A stretch of DNA of 64,000 bases, taken from positions 124,001 through 188,000 of IMG/VR virus record IMGVR_UViG_3300045256_000050. The stretch is one strand, 5' to 3'. Under the pieces are notes generated by a model. The model had not been told where the DNA came from. It ran no database searches and saw nothing but the letters and a program-made list of their open reading frames with translations. Shown one piece after another: positions 5,364 through 54,535 of the stretch. Position 1 is the stretch's first letter, and each line of letters starts with the position of its first letter. The position numbers and the translations under genes were made by a program.

Positions 5364-5909
5364 ATGAATAACAACATTGTCTTCAAGCGGAAGTACCGCT
5401 ACACCCTCGAAGCCACCCTCCCAGGGGGCAACGTCGAACCCTTCTGGGTTAAGATCGGCTGTCGTCCCACAGACCCCATTGTCACCACGGGCGGGCACAG
5501 CGAACAACTCCACGTCATCGTCTACGAGATGGACTTAAACAACGAGTTCTGGAAGGTGATCCAGCCGTCGCTGCACGAGAATGTGCCGTTCGCCCCGGAA
5601 GACAAGCTCGGCACGTTTGTACTGAAGATGTACGACGGCTGCGGCATGCTGATGGAAACCCACACGATGAGCGAAGCCTACATCAGCAGTCTCGTCTTCG
5701 GTGACACTTACCCGGATGAATACGTCTGCTTCGAGTTCGACGTGCGATACCGCAAGTTGACATCCGTGCCGAACGGCGAGTACAAGTACATCCCGCCGAC
5801 GTTCGGTGGGCTGGGCCTTTGTGCAATACCGGCCCCGAAGACAAAGTGCCCGAACTGCCAGCACGAGTTCTTCGCCAGCCCGATCCCGAACCCCTCCATC
5901 ATTTACTGA
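5364..5909 (+). CDS. Diverged tail-tube (gp19-fold) paralog
   Basis: FKRKYRY and MYDGCG motifs shared with tube genes at 24-27 kb; C-terminal CPNC. Confidence 0.6.
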   Translation: MNNNIVFKRKYRYTLEATLPGGNVEPFWVKIGCRPTDPIVTTGGHSEQLHVIVYEMDLNNEFWKVIQPSLHENVPFAPEDKLGTFVLKMYDGCGMLMETHTMSEAYISSLVFGDTYPDEYVCFEFDVRYRKLTSVPNGEYKYIPPTFGGLGLCAIPAPKTKCPNCQHEFFASPIPNPSIIY

Positions 5910-6648
5910 TGAGGAAGTGGCCCTCGACTTCCTGAAGCCACGCCGCCTCGCCCATCATCTTCCTCATGTTCTCGTTGGCCCCTTCGTCCTTGTAGATCGG
6001 ATTCTCCCGGTAGTCGGCCTCGAACGCCTTGAAGTTGTTCGTGCCCTGTAAGGCACCACTCCAAGCCTGCTCGAACCAGTTGCCGATGCCGTTGGTCGTC
6101 GAAAGGGCGAAGCACTTGCCGTCCGTGGACAGCGTGGGGAAGACGCACGGCCACTTCTTGTCGAAGTCCTTAATGAACGCAACCTCGTCGATGATGAGAT
6201 GCGTCACCAGTCGCCCTCGGCACGCCTCCCATGTGTAGAAATCCATGCGGCTGTCGAGGGCGAACGTCTTCTCGTGCTTCGTGTTCTTCACCACCATCCG
6301 GGACATCCACTCCGGCAGGTTGTGGATCGCCCTGGAGACGAGTTCACTAACTTCCTCGGCCTCACGGTAGCTCGGCGACAGTACGAACACCCGCCTTTGC
6401 GGCTGGAAGATGCACTGCCACAGCCCGTACAGTGCCGACATGGTGAGGTAGCCAGCCGACCTGAATTTCTTCACTAACACAAATCTGTTTGTGTTATACG
6501 AGTCGAGCAGGCGGCGGTGGTAGTCGTGTAACTCGAAGGGCACCATGCCCAGCTTCGGGTGCATGATCTTCAGGTAATGCTGGCTGAAGTGGTCAAAGCT
6601 CATCGAGCAGTTGTAGCCCTCTTCCCAGATGGAGTGCGAGATTTTCAT
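5899..6648 (-). CDS. Stand-alone terminase-large-subunit-like ATPase domain, degenerate Walker A, no nuclease domain
   Basis: VPFELHDYH (adenine-binding), KKFRSAGYLT in place of KSRQxGKS/T, LIIDEVAF Walker B, STTNG; ends at WLQEVEGHF. Confidence 0.75.
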   Translation of the reverse strand: MKISHSIWEEGYNCSMSFDHFSQHYLKIMHPKLGMVPFELHDYHRRLLDSYNTNRFVLVKKFRSAGYLTMSALYGLWQCIFQPQRRVFVLSPSYREAEEVSELVSRAIHNLPEWMSRMVVKNTKHEKTFALDSRMDFYTWEACRGRLVTHLIIDEVAFIKDFDKKWPCVFPTLSTDGKCFALSTTNGIGNWFEQAWSGALQGTNNFKAFEADYRENPIYKDEGANENMRKMMGEAAWLQEVEGHFLISK

Positions 6649-6653
6649 ACCCT

Positions 6654-6708
6654 ATTGTAGTTTTACTTTTTTACTTCGCAGCAAAAAAGTAAACAAACAT
6701 CCTATAAT
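6654..6708. promoter_or_regulatory. Divergent -10 boxes flanking an inverted repeat
   Basis: Minus TACAAT-5 nt-ATG6648; plus TATAAT-5 nt-ATG6714; TTTACTTTTTT/AAAAAAGTAAA inverted repeat between. Confidence 0.5.
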
Positions 6709-6713
6709 ACGGT

Positions 6714-7064
6714 ATGACACTAGAAGAAACCATCACCGCCCTCCGGTCGCACCTGGAGGCGTGGTACGAGAAGCGTAAGACCCAGGCCCACGACGGCCGG
6801 GAAGTGCCCAAAGCCTACAACGGCATCCAGCCGATCAACCCTCGGGAGTTGAAGACGGCAGCCGACGAGTTCCTGAGCCAGCACCCGGAATGCAAGGAAC
6901 ACGAATTTGACTTGTACTACGACTTCGTGGTGAAGGACGAGAGCTTCACTCCGGGCTGTATCTGCGGGGACGGCTGTGACGTATTCGCCCACGTCACCAC
7001 GACCGGCGTGAGAGTTCAGGCGATGGATTGGGATAAGCTCGGTCGGCTAGGAGTCGGAGAATGA
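6714..7064 (+). CDS. Hypothetical protein
   Basis: 116-aa ORF coupled to next gene (ATGA). Confidence 0.55.
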   Translation: MTLEETITALRSHLEAWYEKRKTQAHDGREVPKAYNGIQPINPRELKTAADEFLSQHPECKEHEFDLYYDFVVKDESFTPGCICGDGCDVFAHVTTTGVRVQAMDWDKLGRLGVGE

Positions 7065-24704: not shown

Positions 24705-25361
24705 ATGGCTACAAGAGATCGTAAGAATATGGGCATCGGGGTTATCGGCCGTCCCGATATGACCTTCAAGCGTAAGTTCCGGTGGACGTTCGAAATCGTT
24801 GGCTACTGCGACAACGAGAAGAACGTGATTCCTGAACACTTCGTCAAGGTCGCCGCTCGCCCGAACCTCAACATTGAGGAGACGGAAATCAACCACTTGA
24901 ACGCAAAAATGTGGATTCCGGGTAAGGGGTCGTGGGAAACCATCACCGTTACCTACATCGACGTTGCTCACGAAGAGATGCGTAACTTGTGGAACTGGCT
25001 CGCCACCGTGTACGACTTCACGGACCCGATCAAGCTGACCAACGCTGAGAAGCGGGATTGGGACGCTACCGGCGTTCTGAACATGTACGACGGCTGCGGC
25101 ACCCTACTGGAACAATGGCAGTTGCAGCACATGTGGCCGCAAGCCATCAACTTCGGCGACTTGGACTACTCGTCCTCGGAAGAAGCGACCATCGAACTGA
25201 CGCTGCGTTACAGCGACGTTCGTTACCGCTCGTACTGCCCGGACTTCACCCCGCAAGCTTGCTGCTCGCCGTGCGGCACTCGGGTCAAGAAGGTTCAGGG
25301 CAATGACTTTGGCTCGTTCGACCCGTCTCGGCAGGCCAACTTCAACGTGACCAGCGTCTAA
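24705..25361 (+). CDS. Tail tube protein gp19-like, copy 2
   Basis: Same motifs; WPQAINFGDLDYSSS. Confidence 0.85.
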   Translation: MATRDRKNMGIGVIGRPDMTFKRKFRWTFEIVGYCDNEKNVIPEHFVKVAARPNLNIEETEINHLNAKMWIPGKGSWETITVTYIDVAHEEMRNLWNWLATVYDFTDPIKLTNAEKRDWDATGVLNMYDGCGTLLEQWQLQHMWPQAINFGDLDYSSSEEATIELTLRYSDVRYRSYCPDFTPQACCSPCGTRVKKVQGNDFGSFDPSRQANFNVTSV

Positions 25362-25377
25362 GTGAACAGGAGAGATA

Positions 25378-26025
25378 ATGGCTGAAAAAATCCCGATGGG
25401 TATCGGAAACTTGGGCTTCTCGAACTTGATCTTCAAGCGTAAGTTCCGATTCACCTTTGAACTGCAAGATATTTGCGGCAATCAGAGTGTTCCGAAGCAC
25501 TATGTTAAGGTTGCGGCTCGTCCGAACCTTAACGTAGAAGAGGTTGAAGTCAACTTCCTCAACGCTACGACCTGGATTCCGGGTAAGGCTAAGTGGGAGA
25601 CGATGACCGTCACCTACATCGACGTGGCAACTGCGGAGATGGCCTCGTTGTACAACTGGCTCGCCAGCGTGTACAACTTCACCGACCCGATCCAACTCCA
25701 GATGGGTTCGCAGCGTAAGGACTACACTGCGACCGGCATCCTGAAGTTGTGGGACGGCTGTGGTCAGCTTCTCGAAACCTGGACGATGAAGGACGTGTGG
25801 CCGACGAACGTGAACTTCGGTGAACTCGACTACTCTTCTTCGGAAGAAGTGACCATTGAACTGACGCTCCGCTACAGCGACGTTAAGTACAAGAACGAGT
25901 GCCCTGGCTTCACGATTACGCCGTGCTGCTCGCCGTGTGGTGGGTCGAACCCGCCGCCTAACGGCAACACGCCGACTGGCCCAGGAACCGGCAACAAGAC
26001 TAACACGCCGGTCGCTGGCGTCTAA
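25378..26025 (+). CDS. Tail tube protein gp19-like, copy 3
   Basis: Same motifs; WPTNVNFGELDYSSS. Confidence 0.85.
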   Translation: MAEKIPMGIGNLGFSNLIFKRKFRFTFELQDICGNQSVPKHYVKVAARPNLNVEEVEVNFLNATTWIPGKAKWETMTVTYIDVATAEMASLYNWLASVYNFTDPIQLQMGSQRKDYTATGILKLWDGCGQLLETWTMKDVWPTNVNFGELDYSSSEEVTIELTLRYSDVKYKNECPGFTITPCCSPCGGSNPPPNGNTPTGPGTGNKTNTPVAGV

Positions 26026-26030
26026 GAGAC

Positions 26031-26060
26031 AAGAGGGCCGGAAACGGCCCTCTTACTTTT
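26031..26060 (+). terminator. Rho-independent terminator after tube cluster
   Basis: AAGAGGGCCG-GAAA-CGGCCCTCTT, ACTTTT. Confidence 0.8.
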
Positions 26061-26072
26061 TACAGGGGAACT

Positions 26073-26705
26073 ATGGGAAGACGAATGGGGATGGACTTCG
26101 GGTTGCCCGAACCGTTCAGCGGGAACTCGAAGCTCTGCAAGCGGAAGAACCGTTGGTTGTTCAAGATCGAAGGTCTGGTCGCCGACCAGAACCAGATCAA
26201 CTCGTTGCCGCCTCAGAAGTCGGCCCGCCCCGGCTTGCAGTTCAAGGAAATGGAAATCCGGCACCTGAACGAACACATCATGTACCCGCAGAAGCCGGAC
26301 TGGAAGCCGATCACACTCTCCCTCTACGACATCAAGACCAACGTCCTTCACCCGATCTTCGACTGGATCATGAAGGTGTACGAGCCGGACAAGACCGGCA
26401 AGTGGCATCCCGTGGTCAGGACCGGGCCGGTGTCGAATCGCTTCCTTCGGGACGGTATTCTGGAACTCTTCGACGGGTGCGGCAACGTACTTGAACGATG
26501 GACGTTCGAGCAGTGCTGGCCGCAGAACGTGGAATGGGGCGAGTTGGACATGGGCAGCAGTGAAGTGGTCATGTGCGACCTGACCCTGCGGTATGCTCGG
26601 GCCTACACCGAGGTTCTGCCGCCGCCACCGCCGGATCAGAACCAGAACAACGAAAATGGAGAGGGCCAACAGACCCTCTCCACTAACAGTTTGAACGAAC
26701 AATAA
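26073..26705 (+). CDS. Tail tube-fold protein, copy 4 (more diverged)
   Basis: KRKNRW...SARP...PDWKPITL...FDGCG...WPQNVEWGELD. Confidence 0.8.
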   Translation: MGRRMGMDFGLPEPFSGNSKLCKRKNRWLFKIEGLVADQNQINSLPPQKSARPGLQFKEMEIRHLNEHIMYPQKPDWKPITLSLYDIKTNVLHPIFDWIMKVYEPDKTGKWHPVVRTGPVSNRFLRDGILELFDGCGNVLERWTFEQCWPQNVEWGELDMGSSEVVMCDLTLRYARAYTEVLPPPPPDQNQNNENGEGQQTLSTNSLNEQ

Positions 26706-27026: not shown

Positions 27027-27596
27027 TTAACTCCAGTTGTCTATGTGGCCTTCAACTGGAACGTCGAAAGTCCGGCCTCCTCCCAGGGCACTCCCCCGCA
27101 AGACAGCGGACTCGAACCGTTCCTGTAAATGGTTCAGGTACTTGCGCTTCAATTCGTTGTAGTTCTTGATGCTGCGGTAGAGTTGTCGGTAGTGGTTTAG
27201 TATGCAGGTAGTCATGTAGTTGAACGCCTTACCCTTCCGAGGATCAAATCTATCAATTTTCTCGAAACAAATCAAGACCCCTTCTTGAACAGCGTCCTCA
27301 CTGTCGATCCCGCTGTAACGGGCGTAGTAATTGGCGATGTTCTCGCTGAGGATGTAGAAGGCGTAAGCCAACTGTTCCTGGTAGTCCTTGTACGAGCCGC
27401 AGATTCGACCGTACTCAGATTCGGCCTCCGTCATGAGGCCCAAGCGTTCTTCGTCGTTGTACTTCTTCTTCCTTCGCTGGTAAGTTTCTTTTACGTCTGC
27501 CAGCTTCAATTCATGACGCATCTTGGCTCGCTTGAAGCCTTGAAAGGCGTCGATAATCGCTTCGAATGTCTTGTTGTTAAGGTATTCGTTCGCCAT
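27027..27596 (-). CDS. g55: Late-transcription sigma factor gp55-like
   Basis: YLNNKTF...EDAVQEGVLICFEKIDRFDPRKGKAFNYMTT; AGGAG RBS. Confidence 0.75.
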   Translation of the reverse strand: MANEYLNNKTFEAIIDAFQGFKRAKMRHELKLADVKETYQRRKKKYNDEERLGLMTEAESEYGRICGSYKDYQEQLAYAFYILSENIANYYARYSGIDSEDAVQEGVLICFEKIDRFDPRKGKAFNYMTTCILNHYRQLYRSIKNYNELKRKYLNHLQERFESAVLRGSALGGGRTFDVPVEGHIDNWS

Positions 27597-27698
27597 CGCA
27601 CTCCTGTTCAAACCCGGAAAAAAGGGTGAAGGTATATCTGCGTCCGTGCGAAAGAATTCCCTGGAAAACTTCCTGTTTTCCTCTACTCCTATTAAAGT

Positions 27699-27944
27699 AT
27701 GAATCTGGCAAGACTTGTCGCCGACATCCAGCTTCAGCCAAGATCGGTGAGGCCGTACCGGGAGATGGCTGAACTCCTTAGAAAACAAGGCAAAACACAC
27801 GAGGCGAACGTATTCGAGGAACTGGCCGAGCATGTTAACAGCACACGTCGTCACCAAGAACAACATCAAGAGCATCCAGCAGACTCTCGACTCAGTGAAG
27901 CCCCTCCAGTGCCCGGTCAAGATCATCGACCTGGGCAGCAGTGA
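27699..27944 (+). CDS. Small TPR-like hypothetical protein
   Basis: PYREMAELLRKQGKTHEA; overlaps next gene by 113 nt. Confidence 0.35.
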   Translation: MNLARLVADIQLQPRSVRPYREMAELLRKQGKTHEANVFEELAEHVNSTRRHQEQHQEHPADSRLSEAPPVPGQDHRPGQQ

Positions 27945-28761
27945 CGGCACGCCGTCACTCGTCCGACGACTCGGTTACGAGATAGAACACATGGAGGCCG
28001 ACGGTCGTGACGTTGCCCTCAGTAAAACAACATCGTCACCAGGGTGGCACTTCCTCATCCGCCCCGGCGAAGTCCTCGCCGAAGGCCACCGTGCCCTCCA
28101 GACGTTCCGTGGCACCGCCGCCAACGTCCGCCTGATTCGTGACTCGTTCATCTCCTACGAGGTTAGAGTGTGGACCGGGGACACACGGTTCGCCAACCCC
28201 GTGTGGCCGTACCCCGTCATCGAGTCCGACAAGCTCATCGGTGTTAACCTATTCGGCTCCGACAACAATCCTCATGCGTTGGAGGAAGTGGCGGCGTGGC
28301 AGAATCGTAGCCCGACGTTGGGTGAGCCACGATTCTGTAAGGCCATGATCCTCTTCGCCCAGGGTAAGTACAAGGACTTCATGCACGAGGCCGAGCAGTA
28401 CATCTTCGTCGAAAAGCAAGGCCGGTCGGTGACGATGGCCCGGTATTATCACGCCGTCGCCAACATCCTGACCGGGGGCAAGGCCCAGGACTCACTGAAG
28501 CAACTCAATCTGTGCGTGTGCGCCGCCCCGCTCATGGCCGAGTTCTGGTGTGCGATGGGGGACGTGTACTACCACAAGCTGAGTCGGTTCGAGGACGCCG
28601 CCCAGATGTACGAGAACGCCATGTTCGTCGGTGCGAAAAGAAAGTCCACCGACCTGTGGCCGATGGACATCGTGAAGTACCAAGAGTACCCGGAGACGAT
28701 GATCGAGAGTTGCCGCAAGATCATCGCCCACCGGGCTATTTACAAAGTTCAGCCATCTTAG
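27832..28761 (+). CDS. Glycosyltransferase family 2-like with C-terminal TPRs
   Basis: VVTKNN...TLDSV...IIDLGSSDGT; TPR AEFWCAMGDVYY...AAQMYENA. Confidence 0.7.
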   Translation: MLTAHVVTKNNIKSIQQTLDSVKPLQCPVKIIDLGSSDGTPSLVRRLGYEIEHMEADGRDVALSKTTSSPGWHFLIRPGEVLAEGHRALQTFRGTAANVRLIRDSFISYEVRVWTGDTRFANPVWPYPVIESDKLIGVNLFGSDNNPHALEEVAAWQNRSPTLGEPRFCKAMILFAQGKYKDFMHEAEQYIFVEKQGRSVTMARYYHAVANILTGGKAQDSLKQLNLCVCAAPLMAEFWCAMGDVYYHKLSRFEDAAQMYENAMFVGAKRKSTDLWPMDIVKYQEYPETMIESCRKIIAHRAIYKVQPS

Positions 28762-29539
28762 CGTCAAGCTGGGCAGACACGCTCTGCATCTTGAACAGGT
28801 TACTTTCCGTCATTTCCTCGATCTTCTTCTCCATCTCCTTGTGCTGGGTGATGTCGATCAGGGTGCCCTCGATGCATTTGCCGTTGCAGTTCATGTGCAG
28901 GTGGGCGGATACCCAGATGTGACGACCGTCCTTCAGCTTCAGTTCAACCTCGTAGCCTTCGACCCGGCCGGACTTCCGCAACTTGTTCAGGAGCTTCTTC
29001 CGCTGGCCCTTATCGACGTAGAGATCGGATGTCTTCTCCTCGGCCATCAACTCTTTCACCGAGTTGTAGCCCAGCAGACCGGCACACGCCTTGTTCGCCA
29101 TCATGAACTTGCCCGACTCGATCTCCGTCCGTAGGAACGCCACCGGCGTGTCCTCGAAGAAGTTGATGTAGTTGGGGTTGTCTAGGAAGGATAGGTCGTT
29201 CTGCACGCCGATGAAGTGGGTGCATTCGCCGTTCTCGTAGAAGGGGAAGACGTGGAGTTCGATCCGTAGGTTCGTCCCGTCTTTGTGCTTATTCACCATC
29301 TCGACGACCACGGGCAACTTTTCGTCTAGGGCCGTCTTGATCTTTGCTTTCTGTTCGGTATGGTCAAAATCCTCCGAACGGAGGAAGTTGGCGTTGCGAC
29401 CCTGGGCTTCCTCTAGGGAGTAGCCGTTGAGTTCGGTAAACGCAGGGTTGACGTAGATGATTGGGTAGCCCGGACCAGTCGTCGTAATGATGATCGACTG
29501 GTATGCGGACTCGGCGTTAGTGATGAAGTCTTTTAACAT
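28736..29539 (-). CDS. Tandem PAS protein: Cys-less LOV-type domain, second PAS, coiled coil
   Basis: PIIYVNPAFTELNGYSLEEAQGRNANFL...NKHKDG...THFIGVQND; second PAS ANKA...LLGY...KDGRHIWV...DITQHK. Confidence 0.85.
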   Translation of the reverse strand: MLKDFITNAESAYQSIIITTTGPGYPIIYVNPAFTELNGYSLEEAQGRNANFLRSEDFDHTEQKAKIKTALDEKLPVVVEMVNKHKDGTNLRIELHVFPFYENGECTHFIGVQNDLSFLDNPNYINFFEDTPVAFLRTEIESGKFMMANKACAGLLGYNSVKELMAEEKTSDLYVDKGQRKKLLNKLRKSGRVEGYEVELKLKDGRHIWVSAHLHMNCNGKCIEGTLIDITQHKEMEKKIEEMTESNLFKMQSVSAQLDAKMAELCK

Positions 29540-29568
29540 ACCTTGCCCTTAAATGGTGGACAAGGTAT

Positions 29569-29955
29569 TTATGATTCCAGTTCTAGTTCGTTGATGATAA
29601 CCGTGACCTGATCTTGGAATCTAGCTACCTCAACCTGCTTCCGGCCAGGAGGGAGTTTCTGAAGGCGACTCTGGAGTTCGTCGATGTGGCAGTTGATGAC
29701 CGTCCACTCATTCCTTGCCACCTTGTTCATTTCCGCCTCCGGTGCCGCCTCCTTGCCCGGATAGTAGGCGAGCAATTGGGCTTTCGCTACCTGCAAAACC
29801 TTGCGGTATATCGGGTGGTTGCACGCACACCCCGGATTGCTCAGAAACTTCTGCACGTCCGTCAGCAGTTCCTCGGGCAAGGTACTCCTGAATCGCTGAT
29901 CCAGCAGGGCGGATTTCACGTCGGTCAACGATATTCTTCTTGATGATGCTTTCAT
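29569..29955 (-). CDS. Hypothetical protein
   Basis: 128-aa ORF, CACNH motif. Confidence 0.6.
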   Translation of the reverse strand: MKASSRRISLTDVKSALLDQRFRSTLPEELLTDVQKFLSNPGCACNHPIYRKVLQVAKAQLLAYYPGKEAAPEAEMNKVARNEWTVINCHIDELQSRLQKLPPGRKQVEVARFQDQVTVIINELELES

Positions 29956-30307
29956 TCTCTTGCTTCACTTCCGTGTGGTTACTCTCTGGGACGGCGAAGC
30001 CACGGACCGTTAGGCCACGCCCGCACTTCGGGCACTTCACCATCTTCGGCCTCGGCAGTGCCGGGCGGTTTTCCGCCTTACCTGCGGGGGACATTTTCGG
30101 AACCCCACCCGGCACGTTCGCCAACGGCACTCGGGTCATCTGTTGCAGATTGAACCCGATGTCTACCTTCTGCTTGCCGCAGCTATCGCAGTAGACGACG
30201 TACTTCTTAGGCGGTGGGCCTTTCGCCACCGGACCCATCTCCGACAGCTTCATCCCCTCCGATTGTGGCGGTGGTGTCGTGTGCATCCAAGAACTCCTTT
30301 TGAACAA
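29708..30307 (-). CDS. Zinc-ribbon hypothetical protein
   Basis: CDSC and CPKC pairs; long 3' overlap with next gene makes its extent doubtful. Confidence 0.45.
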   Translation of the reverse strand: MFKRSSWMHTTPPPQSEGMKLSEMGPVAKGPPPKKYVVYCDSCGKQKVDIGFNLQQMTRVPLANVPGGVPKMSPAGKAENRPALPRPKMVKCPKCGRGLTVRGFAVPESNHTEVKQENESIIKKNIVDRREIRPAGSAIQEYLARGTADGRAEVSEQSGVCVQPPDIPQGFAGSESPIARLLSGQGGGTGGGNEQGGKE

Positions 30308-32777: not shown

Positions 32778-33184
32778 TGTGTGACTGTTGGTTTAGCTGT
32801 AACGGATGTAATCGAGGATACGTCCCGAATATCACAGACGTTTTCGACTGCCCCTCCAAAGAGGAGCGGGAGTTGATGTCTGAAGGAGTCCGTTTGTTTA
32901 AGAACCGCAACGTCTGGCTGCGAAAGCACAACCAGAGAAAGTTTAACCAGCGTATGAAGTGGTACGAGGAGATGGAGAAGACCGGCGAAATGCCGGACGC
33001 CATGATCCAAGACATGCAAGACGCTGCCCACCGTAACGCAGGCCACGAGCCGGAACCCGCTTGTAACAAGCGATGGACGAGGATGGAAGTGATGTCGCAA
33101 CCCGGCACGTCCTTCCTCTACCGGACCGACGCTGGTCTGTCATTTCTGAACCACCCTCCAGGGTGGGATAACTCCCTGATTTGA
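32777..33184 (+). CDS. Hypothetical protein with N-terminal Cys cluster
   Basis: MCDC...CNGCN; coupled TAATG. Confidence 0.5.
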   Translation: MCDCWFSCNGCNRGYVPNITDVFDCPSKEERELMSEGVRLFKNRNVWLRKHNQRKFNQRMKWYEEMEKTGEMPDAMIQDMQDAAHRNAGHEPEPACNKRWTRMEVMSQPGTSFLYRTDAGLSFLNHPPGWDNSLI

Positions 33185-33215
33185 AAGTCGGAAAGACTCG
33201 AAAGGAACGAAAGCA

Positions 33216-33953
33216 ATGGCAAGAAAGCAAAGATACCAGAACCCTGCCGTGGGCGACCAGATTGAACTTCGGATGCTCACGTTCAACTCTAACAACCTCG
33301 CCGACGTTACAGTTGAGCAGGTGGACGTATACTACCTCGATCCGCAAGCCAAGACCGCTGACAATCCTGACGGGAGACGACTCCTCGATACGATCTCCGG
33401 GGACGCTGTTACGGCCGAGGACACGGGGCAGTATATGTTCATCCTCTCTGCTGACTCCCCGAAGTATTTGATCGGGAAGTACATTGACGTATGGACGATT
33501 CGCACGTCGCAGGACATGCCTGCGTCCACGATCAATAACTACTTTGAAATCTTTCCCCAATTGTGGTACACTTCGCCTGTACCGATTGTTTACGATTTCA
33601 GTTTTCACTTCCAACCAAATCGTCTGCGGCAGGGTTCTCGGCAATATCTCATGGTCGAAGTGATCCCGAACGTTCCACGTTCGACCGATCTCGCCCGATA
33701 CTACACCAACCTCGCCATCGGTGCTGATCTCAGCATCACCATTGAACAACAATGCGGCGACTGCGTGCCGAAGGAGCGTGATCTGCGGGTCGTTGTAGAC
33801 GATGAGCCACTGACGCACCGAGAGAAGTGTTTCGGGTACTACCAGTTGGACACGGAAGAGATGGAATGTGGCATCTACGACGTTACGTTCAAGATGGAGT
33901 TCGGCGGGAACGTATACCTCTCGGACCGTATGCAACTCCAAATCTACAAGTAA
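33216..33953 (+). CDS. Hypothetical beta-rich, probably baseplate/structural protein
   Basis: AAGGA RBS; Ig-like strand pattern; structural context. Confidence 0.55.
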   Translation: MARKQRYQNPAVGDQIELRMLTFNSNNLADVTVEQVDVYYLDPQAKTADNPDGRRLLDTISGDAVTAEDTGQYMFILSADSPKYLIGKYIDVWTIRTSQDMPASTINNYFEIFPQLWYTSPVPIVYDFSFHFQPNRLRQGSRQYLMVEVIPNVPRSTDLARYYTNLAIGADLSITIEQQCGDCVPKERDLRVVVDDEPLTHREKCFGYYQLDTEEMECGIYDVTFKMEFGGNVYLSDRMQLQIYK

Positions 33954-49618: not shown

Positions 49619-50414
49619 ATACCACTCCTATTCCGAAGTCATCTTCGTTGATGTAGTTGTATTCCTTGAACTTCTCGAACGCCTTGTGGCAACGCCTGCG
49701 AACGAACGTCCCAGCGTAACCCTTGAAAGCCATCACTTCGTTCAGGATGGAGTCGATCTCCACCGTGTTCTTCGTGATCGAGGTTGCGTTCTTCACCTTC
49801 TCGGTGAAGTGGCTCAGCCCGTCGGTGATGAGGGCCACCATGTCGTACTCGGCACGGGAGAAGGAGAACGCCCATCCGCTCAACCCGTACTCGATACCCA
49901 TCTCGTTGACACTCACGTCGTCGTCAATGGTCGTGACGACGAACTTCCCCCAGCCGAGCTTCTTCAGGTACTCCTCCCGGTCGCCGGGGGTGAAGCCGTA
50001 CTTCAAGTAGTACGGTCCGCCCGACGTGAACTCGACGGTCACGACCTGGAGTTTGCCGCTGCGGTGACGGGCGATGATGTTGCCGTCACCGTACAGGCAC
50101 CCGCCGAAGTTCGGATCGTTCTTCCTCATCGTCACCCACCCCAGAGTCGCCAGGAGCGAGTTCGGATCGAGTTCCAGACCGTGCCGGTGCAGGTCTGCGG
50201 CCTTGAACACCGCTTCACCGATTACACCCCCGGTCCGCTTCAGCGAGAGTTCGGCGGACTTCGCCAGCAACCGTGCGCCCCAATCCGTGTCCGGGGCCGA
50301 GGAACAGCCGTCGCAGATCACTGCGTAGGCCATGTCCTCAGTCAAACCCGACAGGGCGTAGTCCTGGCAGACTGCGTGCGTCGAACCGATGGTGTAGAAG
50401 GCGTCGGCGTTCAT
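49608..50414 (-). CDS. PP2C-family protein phosphatase
   Basis: GSTHAVCQDY, ICDGCSS, ITDGL, EDD. Confidence 0.8.
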   Translation of the reverse strand: MNADAFYTIGSTHAVCQDYALSGLTEDMAYAVICDGCSSAPDTDWGARLLAKSAELSLKRTGGVIGEAVFKAADLHRHGLELDPNSLLATLGWVTMRKNDPNFGGCLYGDGNIIARHRSGKLQVVTVEFTSGGPYYLKYGFTPGDREEYLKKLGWGKFVVTTIDDDVSVNEMGIEYGLSGWAFSFSRAEYDMVALITDGLSHFTEKVKNATSITKNTVEIDSILNEVMAFKGYAGTFVRRRCHKAFEKFKEYNYINEDDFGIGVVYDG

Positions 50415-52462
50415 TCAGGAACTCCAGAGAGCCACAGTGCGGGTAACACGTCAGACGGGGCACGCCAGTCGCCCCGTGGCGACAGGCCGACAGAACCGAC
50501 CTTCGGGCCGTCCGGGACACAGTTCCGCTTGAACTGGTTCTGAACGAACCGAGCCAGGAACGTCCGCAGGGCGTTCTTCTTCTCGCCCTCGGTGTAGTCT
50601 ATCGAGAACTTCGCCTTCGTCATGAGGTAGGCGATCTTCTCCGGCGGGAACTGGTTCCGCAGGAAGTTGAACAGGATGAAGTCGTGGAGTTCATACGCCC
50701 CCAGGACGCTCTCCGTCTTCTGGACGTGCTGGCCGTCCTTACCCACCGGCAGAAGTTCCGGGGATACAGGCGTTGCCACGATATCGTAGAGGACGCTGGC
50801 GAGCTTGTCCCGCTTCTCGTTACCGCCCTCTATCACGAAGTCGTCGATGCACTCGTCGGCGATGTACTTGACCACGAACTTCACGAGCGTCTTCGGCACG
50901 GTGCAGTTCGGGTTGTAGTTGCTCATGTGGTCGCCGTTGTAGGTACACCACCCCAGAGCCGCCTCCGAGAGATCACCCGTACCGACCACGAACCCCTTCG
51001 AGAAGAGTAACAGGGTCCGCAGACGGGCCTGGACGTTCTCGAACGTCAGGTCTTTCAGTTCTTCGGCGGGCGTCTCTTCGATGAGCTTGTTGATCCACTG
51101 GAACATCCCGTAGCCGTAAGGCTGTTCCTGACCGAATGGGGCATGACGGATCAGCGTCATCACGTCGCTGGTCAGGTGCGTGATCGGCATCGTGGACTGC
51201 GTGATGCCCAGCAGACGCATCAGTTCCAGGGCGTTCCCCTTCGTCCGCTCGGTCGTACCGAACCCCGGCATCGTTGCCCCGTGGATTCGGGTGTGCGGGA
51301 TGCCCAACTCGTCGCAGGCACGGACCACCGCCAGCAGGGCCAGCGTGGAGTCCAGGCCACCGGAGACGCCGATGACAAGCGGCGTACTCGGCTGGAGTTG
51401 TTCGATCCGCCTGCACAGACCGTGCGTCTGAATGCCGAAGATGTCCGAGCAGCGGGCCTGAAGCGTGGTCGGGTCACTCGGCACGAACGGGGCTGGGGCG
51501 ACGTACCGCAGCAGGTCCGTCCTGGGCGTCTCCGTGACCTGGAACCAGACCGGGATGTGGCGGTACTGGTGGTAGTCGTGCCGCCTCGACTGAGTGAAGG
51601 TGTTGGACTTCGCCCGGTCGTTGTTGAGCTTCATCAAGTCCACGTCGGCACGGGCGTAGGCGACTTCCTTGTACTTCAGCCCCTTGCCGACCCGCTTGGA
51701 CTCGTTGAGCAGGTTGCCGTTCTCGGCGATGATGCAGTGCCCGCCGAACACGACATCGCTGCTGCTTTCGGTGGAACCGGCCGAAGAGTAGGCGTAAGCC
51801 GCCACGCACCGGGCCGACTGGTTCTTCACCAAGTCCATCCGGTACTCGCTCTTGGCGACGAGTTCGTTGCTGGCCGAGAGGTTGACGAGAATTTGCGCCC
51901 CGTGGATGGCGGCGTGGGAGGAAGGCGGGATGGGCATCCACATGTCTTCGCAGATTTCGGCGAAGATGCGGACATCGTGGCCCGGCCGTCGGTCGTCGGC
52001 GAACATCAGGTCCGGGCCGAACGGGATGACCCCGCCTGCGAAGTAGACTTCGGTCGGACAGTTCGCATTCCAGGGCGAGAAGTGACGGCCCTCGTAGAAC
52101 TCGCCGTAGTTCGGCATGTACGTCTTCGGGACGATGCCGATGAGCTTCCGGTCTTGGAACGCCAGGGCACAGTTGTAAAGCGCACCTTCCACCCGGACCG
52201 GACAGCCCACGAAGACGAGGGGCGTGGTCGGCAGGTGCTTCCAGAGTTCGATGACGGCCTGTTCGGCGGCGTCGATCAGGTGCTTGTGGCCGAAGTAGTC
52301 GCCGCAGGTGTAGCCGGTGACGGCGAGTTCGGGAAAGACGATCAGGTCGGCGTCGGCTTGGGCCTGTGCCGCTTCGATGATGGATTTGGCGTTCATCGCC
52401 GGGTCGGTGACGTAGACCCTGGGCGAAACGGCCGCAATGCGGAAAAAGCCGAACTTGTCCAT
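50411..52462 (-). CDS. nadE: Glutamine-dependent NAD+ synthetase
   Basis: Nitrilase triad FPEL / PKTY / EICED plus SGGLDST, ENVQARLR, GTGDLSE. Confidence 0.95.
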   Translation of the reverse strand: MDKFGFFRIAAVSPRVYVTDPAMNAKSIIEAAQAQADADLIVFPELAVTGYTCGDYFGHKHLIDAAEQAVIELWKHLPTTPLVFVGCPVRVEGALYNCALAFQDRKLIGIVPKTYMPNYGEFYEGRHFSPWNANCPTEVYFAGGVIPFGPDLMFADDRRPGHDVRIFAEICEDMWMPIPPSSHAAIHGAQILVNLSASNELVAKSEYRMDLVKNQSARCVAAYAYSSAGSTESSSDVVFGGHCIIAENGNLLNESKRVGKGLKYKEVAYARADVDLMKLNNDRAKSNTFTQSRRHDYHQYRHIPVWFQVTETPRTDLLRYVAPAPFVPSDPTTLQARCSDIFGIQTHGLCRRIEQLQPSTPLVIGVSGGLDSTLALLAVVRACDELGIPHTRIHGATMPGFGTTERTKGNALELMRLLGITQSTMPITHLTSDVMTLIRHAPFGQEQPYGYGMFQWINKLIEETPAEELKDLTFENVQARLRTLLLFSKGFVVGTGDLSEAALGWCTYNGDHMSNYNPNCTVPKTLVKFVVKYIADECIDDFVIEGGNEKRDKLASVLYDIVATPVSPELLPVGKDGQHVQKTESVLGAYELHDFILFNFLRNQFPPEKIAYLMTKAKFSIDYTEGEKKNALRTFLARFVQNQFKRNCVPDGPKVGSVGLSPRGDWRAPSDVLPALWLSGVPE

Positions 52463-52508
52463 GATGTCCTCCTTGACACTAGGATACCGTTGGGAGCGTA
52501 GTTGTAAA

Positions 52509-53276
52509 TCAGGGCAGGGTCAAAATCTCCACGCCTTTCTCAGTAACGAGAACCGTGTGTTCGTACTGAGCGGATAGCTTACCGTCCGCCGTCCGAGCCG
52601 TCCAATTGTCGGCGTCGATCCGACAGTGCGGCGTACCGGCGTTAATCATCGGTTCGATGGTGAAGATCATACCCGGCTTCATGACCGGGCCGTGATTCTT
52701 CTTTGTCATGTAGTGATTGACTTCCGGGGCTTCGTGGAATTTCAACCCGACCCCGTGACCGGCGAAGTTGTACACGACGGAGTGGCCGTGAGTCAGTGCG
52801 TACTTGGTGATGGCGAAACCGATGTTGCCGAAGTAGTTACCCGGTCGGACTTCCTTAATGCCGACTTCCAGGCACTTCTTGGCGACTTCCATTACCTGAG
52901 CGGCGTGACGGCTGATCGGCCCGACGGCGAACATCGTGGACGTGTCGCCGAAGTAGCCGTCGAGGATCGTGGACACGTCCACGTTCACGATGTCACCTTC
53001 CTTCAGAATGGTTGTCTCTGAAGGAATGCCGTGGCAGATGACTTCGTTGATGGAGATGCAGCACTCCTTCGGGTAGCCACGGTAGTTGAGCGTGGCCGGA
53101 GTGCCGCCGTGATCCTGCGTGAACTGGATGACGAGTTGGTTAATCGCCTCCGTGCTGACGCCTGGAACAACGTGTGGCCGGATGAAATCGAGGGTTTGGG
53201 CCGTCAGCTTACATGCTTTTCGGATACCCTCGATCTGCTCCGGCGTTTTGATGATGATTTCTTCTGTTACGGTCAT
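52509..53276 (-). CDS. map: Methionine aminopeptidase type I
   Basis: CISINEVICHGIP, GDIVNVD, GYFGDTS, GHGVG, FTIEPMIN, SAQYEHT. Confidence 0.95.
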   Translation of the reverse strand: MTVTEEIIIKTPEQIEGIRKACKLTAQTLDFIRPHVVPGVSTEAINQLVIQFTQDHGGTPATLNYRGYPKECCISINEVICHGIPSETTILKEGDIVNVDVSTILDGYFGDTSTMFAVGPISRHAAQVMEVAKKCLEVGIKEVRPGNYFGNIGFAITKYALTHGHSVVYNFAGHGVGLKFHEAPEVNHYMTKKNHGPVMKPGMIFTIEPMINAGTPHCRIDADNWTARTADGKLSAQYEHTVLVTEKGVEILTLP

Positions 53277-53302
53277 TGTGCCTTCCCTGGCATAATGTAG
53301 TC

Positions 53303-54535
53303 TTACAAGTCTCTCTTTAGGCCAAGCCGCTTGGCGAATGTCCATTTCGCCACCTTGACGGCTTCGGGGTCGCCGGTCGCCTTCGTGTCCACGTCGCTGA
53401 TCTTCACCACCGGCATCCCGTTGACGGTCGCCAGCTTCATGACGATATTCATCGCCTTCGTGCCGCCGAAGGGAACGAAGTCGTTGGTGAAGTTCGTCCC
53501 GATCCCCGCTCCGACGGACTTGAAGCAGTTCTTGTAGAGATCGTACAGTTCGACCGCCTGCCCGGCGTTCAGGCCGTCGCTGAACGTGATCCCCTTCGTC
53601 TTGGGGTCGATCCCCAGCTTGCGGTAGTGGCTGAGAATCTTGTTGGCGAACGCCCGTGGGCAGCCGCTATCCTGCCGCACGGCGTCGTACTCATTTGCCA
53701 AGTGCTTGTCGAAGTCCAGCAGGAACACGTCCGTGCCGAACGTGTCAGGCAGGGCGAGCTTCGGCAAGCCGAGCGGCAGGTGCTTCAGCCACAGGTTGAG
53801 GGCGTGCTTGTTGGCGTGGCTCAGCCCTTCGAGGGCTGAGACGCCCATGTACCACTCGTGGGCGACGGTGCCCAGCGGGGCCATGTTGTACTTCTTGGCG
53901 AGGTAGACGTTGCTCGTGCCGAGGCAGTTGTTGTGCTTCTTGAACTCGGCGACCACGGCGTCCTGAATCTCGAAGCTCCGACGACGACGGGTGCCGAACT
54001 CAGAGAACTTGCACTCGCCCATGAACGTCGCCTTCGCCCCCTGGGCGGCGGCGTAACCGGCGACCAGCGATCCGGTCTTTCGCTTCAGGTTGGTCGTTTC
54101 GGCGGCGAAGGTCAACTCGCTGACGAGGGCGAGTAGTGGAACTTCCCACATGATCGCCGTCTTCCACGGGCCGGACACGGTGATCTTCAGGTTGCCCTGC
54201 GGGTCTTCACCAATGGCAACCTCTTCCGGGTTGTAGAAGAAGTTTTGGAGGAAGTCGATGTAGTTCCTCGGGAAGCCGAGGTTGGAGAGGTAGGCGAGTT
54301 CGTGGTCTTCCAACTTCAGCTTCGCCATGCTCTTGATGGCCTGCTGGAGCTTGTAAGGGATGACGCCGTGCTTGAAGCCGTCGGGCCGGGTGCTGCCCCG
54401 GTCGATGAACTTGTACGTCACCTGGGCGTCCGGGTATTCCTGAAAGACGGCGTTGCCCATCAGGAACTTGTACCAGTCGTTGTCCAAGATGGACGGGATG
54501 ATCTTGCATTCCGGGTCGATGTATTCCGTTGTCAT
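53303..54535 (-). CDS. pncB: Nicotinate phosphoribosyltransferase
   Basis: DNDWYK, EFGTRRR, GTSNV, GTVAHEW, RQDSG, FSDGL, GIGTN (PncB-type, not NAMPT-type). Confidence 0.9.
   Translation of the reverse strand: MTTEYIDPECKIIPSILDNDWYKFLMGNAVFQEYPDAQVTYKFIDRGSTRPDGFKHGVIPYKLQQAIKSMAKLKLEDHELAYLSNLGFPRNYIDFLQNFFYNPEEVAIGEDPQGNLKITVSGPWKTAIMWEVPLLALVSELTFAAETTNLKRKTGSLVAGYAAAQGAKATFMGECKFSEFGTRRRRSFEIQDAVVAEFKKHNNCLGTSNVYLAKKYNMAPLGTVAHEWYMGVSALEGLSHANKHALNLWLKHLPLGLPKLALPDTFGTDVFLLDFDKHLANEYDAVRQDSGCPRAFANKILSHYRKLGIDPKTKGITFSDGLNAGQAVELYDLYKNCFKSVGAGIGTNFTNDFVPFGGTKAMNIVMKLATVNGMPVVKISDVDTKATGDPEAVKVAKWTFAKRLGLKRDL

What the first reader, a model, noticed from the sequence alone, without database searches (positions are those of the whole stretch)
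28736..29571. Phage-encoded Cys-less LOV domain plus second PAS with no output domain, behind a late-type promoter
Seen: domain 1 keeps the LOV hallmarks (PIIYVNPAFTEL.GYS.EE..GRN, N..KDG, FIGVQ with the signalling Gln), but the adduct-forming Cys of GRNCRFLQ is Ala (GRNANFLR). A second PAS and a coiled coil follow, with no kinase or HTH. TAAATA lies at 29571-29566. Established: Cys-less LOV domains can still signal through flavin photoreduction or redox. Inference: a light/redox sensor or a decoy that heterodimerises with host PAS-histidine kinases via the coiled coil. Sensory proteins like this are unusual in phages.
Basis: partly seen in the sequence, partly recalled or inferred. Interest (0 to 1): 0.75.

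Follow-up and report, generated by a model that had tools for sequence, protein, structure and literature searches.

The report
Phage tandem-PAS protein with degenerate LOV domain
A large T4-like phage from a hot-spring microbial mat carries a well-conserved 267-residue protein made only of a LOV-derived PAS domain that has lost the light-reactive cysteine, a second PAS domain with an invariant cysteine pair, and a coiled-coil-like tail; it belongs to a phage-only family whose conserved core is the second PAS domain, so it is more likely a protein-binding regulator than a true blue-light receptor.

Summary
ORF 28736..29539 (-) encodes 267 aa with an N-cap helix, a LOV-like PAS domain, a second PAS domain and a 36-residue C-terminal helix, and no output domain. 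Its best PDB matches are all LOV domains, and the adduct Cys is Ala (A50).

Three further LOV-signature residues are also changed (R63->N, Q66->R, N104->I, YtvA numbering). The domain keeps 6 of the 9 residues listed in a published Cys-less-LOV criterion that asks for at least 9 of 10.

I assembled a 19-member family found only on phage contigs. None of the 14 LOV-like domains has Cys (Ala in 6, Pro in 8), and 5 members lack that domain entirely. All 22 invariant residues lie in the N-cap/PAS2 segment (residues 124-231), including an N-C-x-G-x-C-x-E hairpin motif. dN/dS is 0.05-0.18.

The gene is an insertion in a conserved locus and always converges on a glycosyltransferase gene. A TA[AG]ATA element sits 31-38 nt upstream of the ATG in 9 of 10 loci, which supports a T4-late-like promoter.

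Best reading: a dimeric, output-less PAS adaptor acting through PAS2 and the coiled coil. The LOV-like domain is an optional module that may sense redox. Flavin binding is not excluded, because C62A and N104I are tolerated in YtvA. Partner and signal are unknown.

The parts
28736..29539 (-). CDS of the 267-aa tandem-PAS protein (P0001), including the stop codon 28736-28738
   Evidence: dN/dS 0.05-0.18 against orthologs
29186..29539 (-). Residues 1-118: N-cap helix (2-9) plus LOV-derived PAS domain (strands 15-115). The adduct position is Ala50 (codon 29390-29392).
   Evidence: Pfam PAS_9 4.8e-20; LOV PDB matches with alignment to YtvA; model; rmsd 1.1-2.4 A to LOV structures
28847..29185 (-). 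Residues 119-231: linker/N-cap helix (122-130) and PAS2, the family's conserved core
   Evidence: all 22 family-invariant residues lie at 124-231; lowest dN; model pLDDT 90
28874..28891 (-). Codons for N217-C218-N219-G220-K221-C222: the invariant N-C-x-G-x-C hairpin motif between strands H and I of PAS2
   Evidence: invariant in 19 of 19 members; absent from the aligned cellular multi-PAS homologs, which lack the first Cys
28739..28846 (-). Residues 232-267: C-terminal amphipathic helix, coiled-coil-like
   Evidence: model helix 231-266; conserved hydrophobic seam at 236/240/243/248/251/254/258/262/265 and a 7-residue (one heptad) indel between clades
29560..29573 (-). Conserved upstream element CATAAATACCTTGT (TAAATA at 29571-29566), 32 nt before the ATG; a candidate gp55-type late -10 box. 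Its TAA is also the stop codon of the upstream 128-aa ORF.
   Evidence: TAAATAC.TTGT invariant in 4 orthologous loci, including two where it is not a stop codon; TA[AG]ATA at -31 to -38 in 9 of 10 loci; 9 of 13 CATA[AG]ATA sites in the genome lie <=70 nt upstream of same-strand gene starts
29546..29550 (-). Shine-Dalgarno-like AAGGG, 6 nt before the ATG
   Evidence: read from the sequence; GGxCAAGGTATG conserved in orthologs
27832..28761 (+). Context: convergent 309-aa GT2-like plus TPR glycosyltransferase gene whose 3' end overlaps the PAS gene by 26 nt
   Evidence: a convergent, 3'-overlapping glycosyltransferase gene is present in every family locus, but it is a non-homologous RGP type in the distant clade
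27030..27611 (-). Context: gp55-like late sigma factor gene
   Evidence: phrog_234 late sigma 5.7e-6; Sigma70_r2 1.2e-7

Best explanation
The gene encodes a member of a phage-specific family of output-less PAS proteins.

Shown: it is a real gene under strong purifying selection. It was inserted into a conserved late-gene neighbourhood of a large T4-like phage. Its universal core is PAS2, carrying an invariant N-C-x-G-x-C-x-E hairpin, followed by a C-terminal amphipathic helix. The N-terminal domain descends from LOV-type PAS domains, has no adduct Cys in any family member, and can be absent.

Inferred: the protein forms a parallel dimer through its N-cap helices and C-terminal coiled coil, like short LOV proteins and the LOV-PAS module of Brucella LOV-HK. 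It acts purely by binding another protein. Candidates are a PAS or coiled-coil sensor kinase (of the host, or the phage's own ETR1-type kinase), the adjacent glycosyltransferase, or the late transcription machinery. The PAS2 cysteine pair would serve as a thiol or metal switch. The LOV-like domain would serve as an optional input module that senses redox if it binds flavin at all, and not light through a cysteinyl adduct. It is probably transcribed from a gp55-type late promoter, so it would act late in infection or be carried into the next one.
For: Architecture and absence of an output domain. Closest full-length fold is the Brucella LOV-HK LOV-PAS module (6pps, 6ph3, 6ph4). PAS2 plus tail resembles PAS-plus-J-alpha modules of short LOV proteins and kinase sensor linkers. 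Family of 19 on phage-type contigs, with no match to the signature motifs in 185,579 species genomes. All 22 invariant residues lie in residues 124-231, and 5 members are PAS2-only with no LOV remnant upstream. The NCxGxC motif is phage-specific relative to cellular homologs. dN/dS is 0.05-0.18 and PAS2 has the lowest dN. LOV-signature positions: 6 of 9 kept, 2 of 9 invariant in the family, Cys never present, measured against the criterion in PMC4682037. Heptad-like seam and a one-heptad indel. The syntenic locus in relative LR756511.1 lacks the gene. Conserved TA[AG]ATA at -31 to -38, and a gp55 homolog is present.
Against: No partner, ligand or oligomeric state has been observed; all of these are inferred from homology and conservation. 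The LOV-like domain is itself under purifying selection (dN/dS 0.05-0.18). It also keeps the residues that a deep mutational scan found essential for FMN binding in YtvA (N94, the K97-E56 salt bridge, G51/Y52), while C62A and N104I are tolerated there, so a flavin-dependent function cannot be dismissed. Late timing rests only on a motif.
Confidence: 0.55

Rival explanations
1. One reading: a genuine flavin-binding, Cys-less LOV sensor that reports blue light or redox through flavin photoreduction or chemical reduction, and passes the signal through PAS2 and the coiled coil.
For: Best PDB matches are LOV domains at 31-41% identity. The source is an illuminated hot-spring microbial mat. Natural Cys-less LOV-like domains with Ala or Pro at this position exist, and one of them (BAT-LOV*, which has Pro) binds flavin and responds to reduction (PMC4682037). 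In YtvA-C62A, N104I, R79L and Q123L keep FMN fluorescence (PMC4041573). The N94, K97, E56, G51 and Y52 equivalents are invariant in the family.
Against: Only 6 of the 9 listed signature residues are kept, against the published threshold of at least 9 of 10. Q66 is Arg and R63 is Asn; Q66L abolishes function in YtvA-FbFP. N61, R63, Q66 and Q123 vary within a family that is otherwise strongly constrained. Five members lack the domain entirely. No family-invariant residue lies in this domain.
Confidence: 0.25
2. PAS2 is a small-molecule-binding domain, and the protein works as a ligand sensor or sponge (for a metabolite or an immune or signalling molecule) rather than as a protein-binding adaptor.
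For: The invariant residues include polar and aromatic types typical of PAS pockets: R137, N149, Y174, R180, W209, N217 and E224. PAS2 is the most constrained part.
Against: There is no similarity to any ligand-defined PAS class: no PDB sequence hit and only generic fold matches. It was not shown that the invariant residues face the cavity. Late-type expression and the coiled-coil tail fit a regulator better than a sponge.
Confidence: 0.1
3. The protein is a dedicated partner or regulator of the convergent glycosyltransferase, for example gating DNA or virion glycosylation on cell state.
For: In every locus the PAS gene converges on, and overlaps at its 3' end, a 309-328-aa glycosyltransferase gene, even where the other neighbours differ. 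The window's partner is GT2-like plus TPR, and TPR is a protein-binding module.
Against: The two clades' glycosyltransferases are not homologous (BLASTP E=1.9). LR756511.1 has the GT2-TPR gene without any PAS gene. The adjacency could simply reflect a shared insertion site.
Confidence: 0.08
4. A decaying remnant of a captured host LOV-PAS histidine kinase, with no function of its own.
For: The architecture equals the sensor half of LOV-PAS kinases, and the chromophore site is degenerate.
Against: The length is fixed at 267 aa in the six closest orthologs, there are no frameshifts, dN/dS is 0.05-0.18 with saturated dS, the upstream element and RBS are conserved, and there are phage-specific invariant motifs. 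No H-box or DHp remnant was found.
Confidence: 0.02

Closest known systems
Bacillus subtilis YtvA LOV domain and its C62A fluorescent derivative EcFbFP (PDB 2PR5/2PR6)
   Same: Second-best PDB sequence match (E 5.1e-17; the top hit is a Meiothermus ruber LOV domain, 9vf7). Same fold. Ala at the Cys62 position, as in EcFbFP. N94, Q123, G59, N61, F64, L65 and the K97-E56 salt bridge are conserved. N104I, seen here, is tolerated in EcFbFP.
   Different: R63->N, Q66->R, R79->K. No STAS output domain; instead a second PAS domain and a helix. Flavin binding is unproven.
Brucella abortus LOV-HK sensor module (LOV-PAS, PDB 6PPS/6PH3/6PH4)
   Same: Best full-length structural match (Foldseek E 5e-17, 253-283 aligned columns): a LOV-type PAS domain, then a second PAS domain, then a helix.
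   Different: No histidine-kinase domain, no H-box and no adduct Cys. The phage PAS2 carries an NCxGxC motif not found in the cellular multi-PAS homologs aligned.
Natural Cys-less LOV-like domains (LOV*), e.g. halobacterial BAT-LOV* (Yee et al. 2015, PMC4682037)
   Same: The adduct Cys is replaced by Ala (window clade) or Pro (distant clade), the same substitutions reported for LOV*. The proposed redox rather than adduct signalling is the natural analogy.
   Different: Fails that paper's sequence criterion (6 of the 9 listed residues, where at least 9 of 10 are required). N104 is never Asn in the family. The protein is phage-encoded and has no output domain.
Short LOV proteins (PpSB1-LOV, SBW25-LOV, W619_1-LOV) and stand-alone PAS proteins
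   Same: PAS core flanked by an N-cap helix and a long C-terminal J-alpha-type helix, with no effector domain; these are presumed to act by dimerisation and partner binding.
   Different: Two PAS domains rather than one. The conserved module is not the LOV-like one. The invariant Cys pair is new.
Cysteine-based redox switching in PAS domains (E. coli ArcB Cys180/Cys241; from my own knowledge, not tested here)
   Same: Conserved cysteines within a PAS domain, proposed as the sensing element.
   Different: ArcB is a membrane kinase and its cysteines form intermolecular disulfides. Here the two Cys flank a beta-hairpin turn (i, i+4), and their chemistry is unknown.
Other phage- and virus-encoded PAS proteins (phrog_5982; BFVD entries such as Agrobacterium phage Atu_ph07 multi-sensor histidine kinase and 'PAS domain [uncultured Caudovirales phage]')
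   Same: They show that PAS sensors occur in large phages.
   Different: None is a close relative. Apart from short fragments labelled as Listeria phage, which match a LOV-like stretch, no record in the 50,697-record phage collection matches this protein.

Membership tests
Canonical LOV photoreceptor domain | PAS fold most similar to LOV domains | tested here: met
   The top 60 PDB sequence hits are all LOV; rmsd 1.1-2.4 A and TM 0.8-0.93 to LOV structures
Canonical LOV photoreceptor domain | Adduct-forming Cys in the GXNCRFLQ motif | tested here: not met
   Ala50 (GRNANFLR); Ala or Pro in all 14 family members that have the domain
Canonical LOV photoreceptor domain | Conserved flavin-contact residues (YtvA G59, N61, R63, F64, L65, Q66, N94, N104, Q123) | tested here: not met
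   6 of 9 kept; R63->N, Q66->R, N104->I
Canonical LOV photoreceptor domain | Bound flavin chromophore and a blue-light photocycle | not testable with these tools
   Requires purified protein and spectroscopy
Cys-less LOV-like (LOV*) as defined in PMC4682037 | Lacks Cys62 but keeps at least 9 of the other 10 conserved LOV residues | tested here: not met
   Cys is absent, but only 6 of the 9 listed residues are kept
Cys-less LOV-like (LOV*) as defined in PMC4682037 | Binds flavin and changes conformation on reduction | not testable with these tools
   C62A and N104I are tolerated and N94 is essential in YtvA-FbFP, so it remains possible; Q66R and R63N are the doubtful changes
Short LOV / stand-alone PAS regulator | PAS core(s) with flanking helices and no effector domain | tested here: met
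Short LOV / stand-alone PAS regulator | Dimerisation through N-cap helices and a C-terminal coiled coil | tested here: inconclusive
   Conserved hydrophobic seam and a one-heptad indel; no multimer model or experiment
LOV-PAS histidine kinase (Brucella LOV-HK type) | LOV-PAS tandem sensor | tested here: met
   Best full-length fold match
LOV-PAS histidine kinase (Brucella LOV-HK type) | DHp with phospho-accepting His plus a catalytic ATPase domain | tested here: not met
   No HisKA, HWE or HATPase hit down to E=1; the protein ends after the helix; His233 is not conserved
T4-type late gene (gp55-dependent) | gp55-family sigma factor encoded by the phage | tested here: met
T4-type late gene (gp55-dependent) | TATAAATA-type -10 element upstream | tested here: inconclusive
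   Exact TATAAATA is absent from the genome; the variant (C/N)(A/T)TA(A/G)ATA is conserved at -31 to -38 in 9 of 10 loci and recurs upstream of genes, though some instances are stop/SD gene junctions
T4-type late gene (gp55-dependent) | Transcribed late in infection | not testable with these tools
   No cultured host and no time-resolved transcript data

The most novel reading that the evidence does not exclude
A late-expressed, possibly virion-delivered redox or light sensor. The LOV-like domain would hold a flavin, with the invariant Arg at the Q66 position stabilising reduced flavin. Together with the PAS2 Cys pair, it would let a microbial-mat phage read the host's day-night redox state and gate a late function such as glycosylation, lysis timing, or the phage's own ETR1-type two-component system. 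That would make it a phage-autonomous environmental sensing pathway.
Probability: 0.12. Interest if true: 0.8.

Novelty: new variant of a known kind. Interest (0 to 1): 0.5.

Why it matters
Phages are usually thought to read host state only indirectly. A conserved, phage-only family of stand-alone PAS proteins, sitting in the same genome as a phage-encoded ethylene-receptor-like kinase and receiver, suggests that some large phages carry their own signal-input hardware. For photobiology, the family is a natural series of LOV-derived domains with Ala or Pro at the adduct site and Ile or Val at N104. It could test how far a LOV pocket can drift and still bind flavin. If the PAS2 Cys pair is a redox switch, it would be a compact new sensor module. 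If the protein turns out to bind nothing and sense nothing, it is simply one more accessory gene of unknown function in a jumbo-type phage.

Tried and rejected
1. The exact T4 late consensus TATAAATA does not occur in the 245-kb record. ATAAATA and TAAATA are at or below composition expectation. Only position and comparative conservation rescued the promoter idea.

2. The tail as a DHp/H-box remnant is rejected. There is no HisKA, HisKA_2 or HWE hit. His233 and the 'MQSVS' stretch are not conserved across the family. The linker lengths of canonical LOV kinases do not match.

3. The ligand class of PAS2 could not be found. There is no PDB sequence hit, and the Foldseek and Swiss-Prot fold matches are generic PAS-plus-helix. 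The ESM Atlas results are also generic.

4. Host inference failed. Using the phage kinase gave only 24-30% matches to the kinase core. There is no psbA or reaction-centre gene in the record and no tRNA in the window.

5. A supposed unannotated 53-aa gene upstream is rejected. The 128-aa ORF 29569..29955 has a 134-aa homolog in LR756511.1.

6. The 'conserved PAS-glycosyltransferase pair' as simple shared ancestry does not hold, because the two clades' glycosyltransferases are not homologous. The meaning of the pairing is left open.

7. Pocket geometry and the Cys-Cys distance could not be measured, because model coordinates are not exposed to scripts.

8. Literature searches found no prior report of a natural phage LOV or LOV-like protein.
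Full report
**1. The observation**

The ORF 28736..29539 on the minus strand starts with ATG and encodes 267 aa. Ala50 is codon GCC at 29392-29390.

Pfam finds PAS_9 (4.8e-20, residues 17-117) and a second PAS stretch, and nothing else down to E=1. There is no kinase, HTH, GGDEF or STAS domain. The top 60 PDB sequence matches are all LOV domains or LOV fusions. They include a Meiothermus ruber LOV domain, YtvA, Brucella LOV-HK, phototropin LOV2, EL222 and Chloroflexus CagFbFP, with E from 5e-17 to 3e-11. The printed alignment to YtvA puts Ala50 on Cys62.

An AlphaFold2 model built on a 10-sequence family alignment has mean pLDDT 88. It shows an N-cap helix at 2-9, PAS1 strands at 15-115, a linker helix at 122-130, PAS2 strands at 134-229, and one long helix at 231-266. 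TAAATA is at 29571-29566.

**2. The genome**

The window carries a gp23-like major head gene, a tail sheath gene, three tail-tube paralogs, a T4-type baseplate hub gene and a gp55-like late sigma gene. It lies in a single 244,986-bp viral record whose completeness is estimated at about 48%.

Near-identical DNA occurs in hot-spring and microbial-mat metagenomes. Weak relatives occur in soil, wastewater and activated-sludge runs. The nearest deposited phage by major capsid protein (75% aa identity) is the 595-kb uncultured huge phage LR756511.1. The gene is therefore phage-encoded, in a large T4-like phage from an illuminated mat habitat. The host is unknown. No reaction-centre gene is present in the record.

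**3. The LOV-like domain differs from LOV at more than the Cys**

The YtvA alignment reproduces the known YtvA residue numbers. Mapped onto the phage protein it gives:

- C62 -> A50
- R63 -> N51
- Q66 -> R54
- R79 -> K68
- N94 -> N83 (kept)
- N104 -> I93
- Q123 -> Q113 (kept)
- G59, N61, F64 and L65 are also kept

Yee et al. (PMC4682037) defined natural Cys-less LOV-like domains as lacking C62 but keeping at least 9 of the other 10 conserved residues. They list G59, N61, R63, F64, L65, Q66, N94, N104 and Q123. This protein keeps 6 of those 9, so it fails that operational definition.

A deep mutational scan of the YtvA-C62A fluorescent protein (PMC4041573) points the other way. N104I, N104S, R79L and Q123L retain FMN fluorescence, while N94I, N94S and Q66L lose it. 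The K97-E56 salt bridge and G51/Y52 are essential. The phage protein has exactly C62A and N104I, keeps N94, and keeps the salt-bridge and G-Y equivalents, which are invariant in the family. Flavin binding is therefore doubtful because of Q66R and R63N, but it is not excluded. I put it at roughly one in three.

**4. The family**

A word-indexed search, an exhaustive HMMER search of 1.84 billion representatives, and a profile search together recovered 19 members (alignment A6).

- *Six close orthologs.* They share 73-87% identity, and all are 267 aa.
- *Eight distant full-length members.* They share 34-43% identity and are 259-277 aa.
- *Five PAS2-only members.* These proteins of 139-164 aa consist only of PAS2 and the tail. 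In one of them the locus has no LOV-like remnant upstream at tblastn E<=10, so the short form is genuine.

All members lie on phage-type contigs. The window clade sits beside the sigma, tail-tube, sheath and baseplate genes. The distant clade sits beside a Dda-like helicase, homing endonucleases and a DNA methylase. A pattern scan with the family's signature peptides found no relative in one genome from each of 185,579 prokaryote species. IMG/VR holds two contigs.

The best cellular hits are giant multi-PAS sensors at about 30% identity. The N-domain's nearest cellular relatives include both canonical LOV (GRNCRFLQG...FWN) and a Cys-less 'P-G' type that also lacks N104. The Cys-less state may therefore predate capture by the phage.

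**5. Where the constraint lies**

No member has the adduct Cys: Ala in the 6 window-clade proteins and Pro in the 8 distant ones. The N104 position is never Asn. Of the 9 LOV-signature positions, only 2 are invariant among the first eight full-length members.

By contrast, all 22 residues invariant across the 19 proteins lie in 124-231. They are Y124, F127, A134, R137, T138, G143, A148, N149, A153, G157, L164, Y174, R180, W209, A212, N217, C218, G220, C222, E224, I230 and T231. The N-C-x-G-x-C-x-E motif sits at the hairpin between strands H and I. The cellular homologs aligned lack the first Cys.

Pairwise Nei-Gojobori estimates give dN/dS of 0.05-0.18 with synonymous sites saturated. PAS2 has the lowest dN. 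The protein is clearly functional. Its conserved business end is PAS2, and the LOV-like domain is a constrained but dispensable add-on.

**6. The tail**

Residues 231-266 form one helix in both models. Family-wide, strongly hydrophobic residues recur at 236, 240, 243, 248, 251, 254, 258, 262 and 265. The distant clade differs by a deletion of exactly seven residues, 232-238. That is the length rule expected for a coiled-coil signalling helix.

The best full-length structural analog is the LOV-PAS module of Brucella LOV-HK. PAS2 plus tail matches PAS-plus-J-alpha modules of short LOV proteins and kinase sensor linkers. No H-box is present.

**7. Locus and expression signal**

LR756511.1 has the same locus in the same order: sigma, GT2-TPR gene, 134-aa gene, Zn-ribbon gene, membrane protein gene and baseplate hub. 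It has no PAS gene, and the 134-aa gene abuts the convergent 304-aa gene directly. The PAS gene is thus an accessory insertion.

In every family locus it converges on a 309-328-aa glycosyltransferase gene and overlaps it at the 3' end. That gene is GT2-like plus TPR in the window clade and a non-homologous RGP type (PF03214) in the distant clade.

Upstream, the T4 consensus TATAAATA is absent from the record, and TAAATA is not over-represented overall. Three lines of evidence nevertheless support a real element:

- TAAATAC(C/T)TTGT is invariant in four orthologous loci despite saturated synonymous divergence, including two loci where it is not the upstream gene's stop codon.
- TA[AG]ATA lies 31-38 nt before the ATG in 9 of 10 loci from at least five lineages, where chance gives 0.2-1.5% per locus.
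- In this genome, 13 of 29 TAAATA sites and 9 of 13 CATA[AG]ATA sites lie just upstream of same-strand gene starts, including genes of the structural module. Some of these are simply stop/SD junctions.

With a gp55 homolog encoded nearby, a T4-late-like promoter is the best reading. No transcript data exist.

**8. Mechanism**

Shown: the protein is a conserved, phage-specific, output-less tandem-PAS protein with a coiled-coil-like tail. PAS2 with its Cys pair is the invariant core. The LOV-derived domain has no adduct Cys anywhere in the family.

Inferred, with about 0.55 confidence for the overall picture: it is a dimeric adaptor that works by binding another protein through PAS2 and the tail. 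The Cys pair would act as a thiol or metal switch. The LOV-like domain would act as an optional input that senses redox if it holds a flavin at all.

Candidate partners are:

- host multi-PAS kinases;
- the phage's own ETR1_N-HisKA-HATPase kinase, which has no cytoplasmic sensor domain, and its adjacent receiver;
- the convergent glycosyltransferase;
- the late transcription apparatus.

None of these has been tested. A ligand-binding or sponge role for PAS2 (0.1) and a dedicated glycosyltransferase partner (0.08) are minor rivals. A dead kinase remnant is excluded by the selection data.

**9. Novelty and score**

Stand-alone PAS and short LOV proteins, Cys-less LOV-like domains, and PAS proteins in large phages are all known kinds. 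New here is a phage-only family that combines a drifting LOV-derived domain with a distinct, invariant Cys-bearing PAS2 and a coiled coil, placed behind a conserved late-type element.

I found no prior report of such a protein. I rate it a new variant of a known kind, with interest 0.5. It is worth a bench test for flavin, thiol chemistry and partners, but it is not yet evidence that a phage senses light.

Noticed in passing
Same phage record, outside the window: G000:C1:31937-33070 (+) and 33067-33408 (+) (locus L014:712-1845 and 1842-2183): The phage encodes its own two-component pair. One gene is a 377-aa histidine kinase with an ethylene-receptor-like membrane domain (Pfam ETR1_N 1.7e-26, with a CGLTH motif like the ETR1 Cys65/His69 site), HisKA and HATPase_c. 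It is followed, with a 4-nt overlap, by a 113-aa single-domain response regulator. An ethylene-receptor-type sensor kinase in a phage seems unusual and deserves its own look.
   Followed up: partly
window 57778-60097 (-): A complete group II intron. Rfam finds D1-D4 at 60019-60097 and domain V/VI (Intron_gpII) at 57778-57853. Between them lies a 560-aa reverse-transcriptase/maturase/HNH ORF at 57874-59556 (phrog_1423, 8.9e-103). The interrupted host gene was not identified.
   Followed up: partly
window 50411-54535 (-): NAD salvage genes: a 683-aa NAD-synthetase-like ORF (50411-52462) and a 410-aa nicotinamide phosphoribosyltransferase-like ORF (53303-54535).
   Followed up: no
window 27832-28761 (+); L026:8764-9747, L028:8764-9750, L030:8492-9466, L008:1206-2150: The PAS gene always converges on, and overlaps at its 3' end, a glycosyltransferase gene of about 310-328 aa. 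That gene is GT2-like plus TPR in the window clade (structure TM 0.8+) and an unrelated RGP (PF03214) type in the distant clade (BLASTP E=1.9). This looks like non-orthologous replacement at a fixed position. The distant clade also has sugar-nucleotide genes nearby (NTP_transferase, LicD, Glyco_transf_9, DegT).
   Followed up: partly
window 24705-26705 (+): Three tandem tail-tube (gp19-like) paralogs of 218, 215 and 210 aa (phrog_4542 confirmed for the last two). All three are conserved in the orthologous loci.
   Followed up: no
window 29569-30307 (-): The 128-aa ORF (29569-29955) is overlapped for 248 nt, in another frame, by a 199-aa Zn-ribbon ORF (29708-30307). Gene callers on the related contigs kept only the Zn-ribbon ORF and left a 179-nt 'gap'. 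The 128-aa ORF is nevertheless real, because it has a 134-aa homolog in LR756511.1, where the Zn-ribbon gene is only 95 aa.
   Followed up: partly
window 6649-6713 and other intergenic regions: An inverted repeat built from AAAAAGTAAA / TTTACTTTTT lies between the divergent genes 5899..6648 (-) and 6714..7064 (+). The 7-mers AAAGTAA and TTACTTT are enriched about 11-fold upstream of genes genome-wide. This may be an early or middle promoter, or an operator motif.
   Followed up: no
INPHARED records OR847435.1, OR848284.1, OR848423.1, OR847031.1: The only matches to the LOV-like domain in the phage collection are unannotated 3-9-kb fragments labelled as Listeria phage (about 40% identity over residues 30-117). 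They may be host-derived LOV (YtvA-like) sequence rather than phage genes.
   Followed up: no
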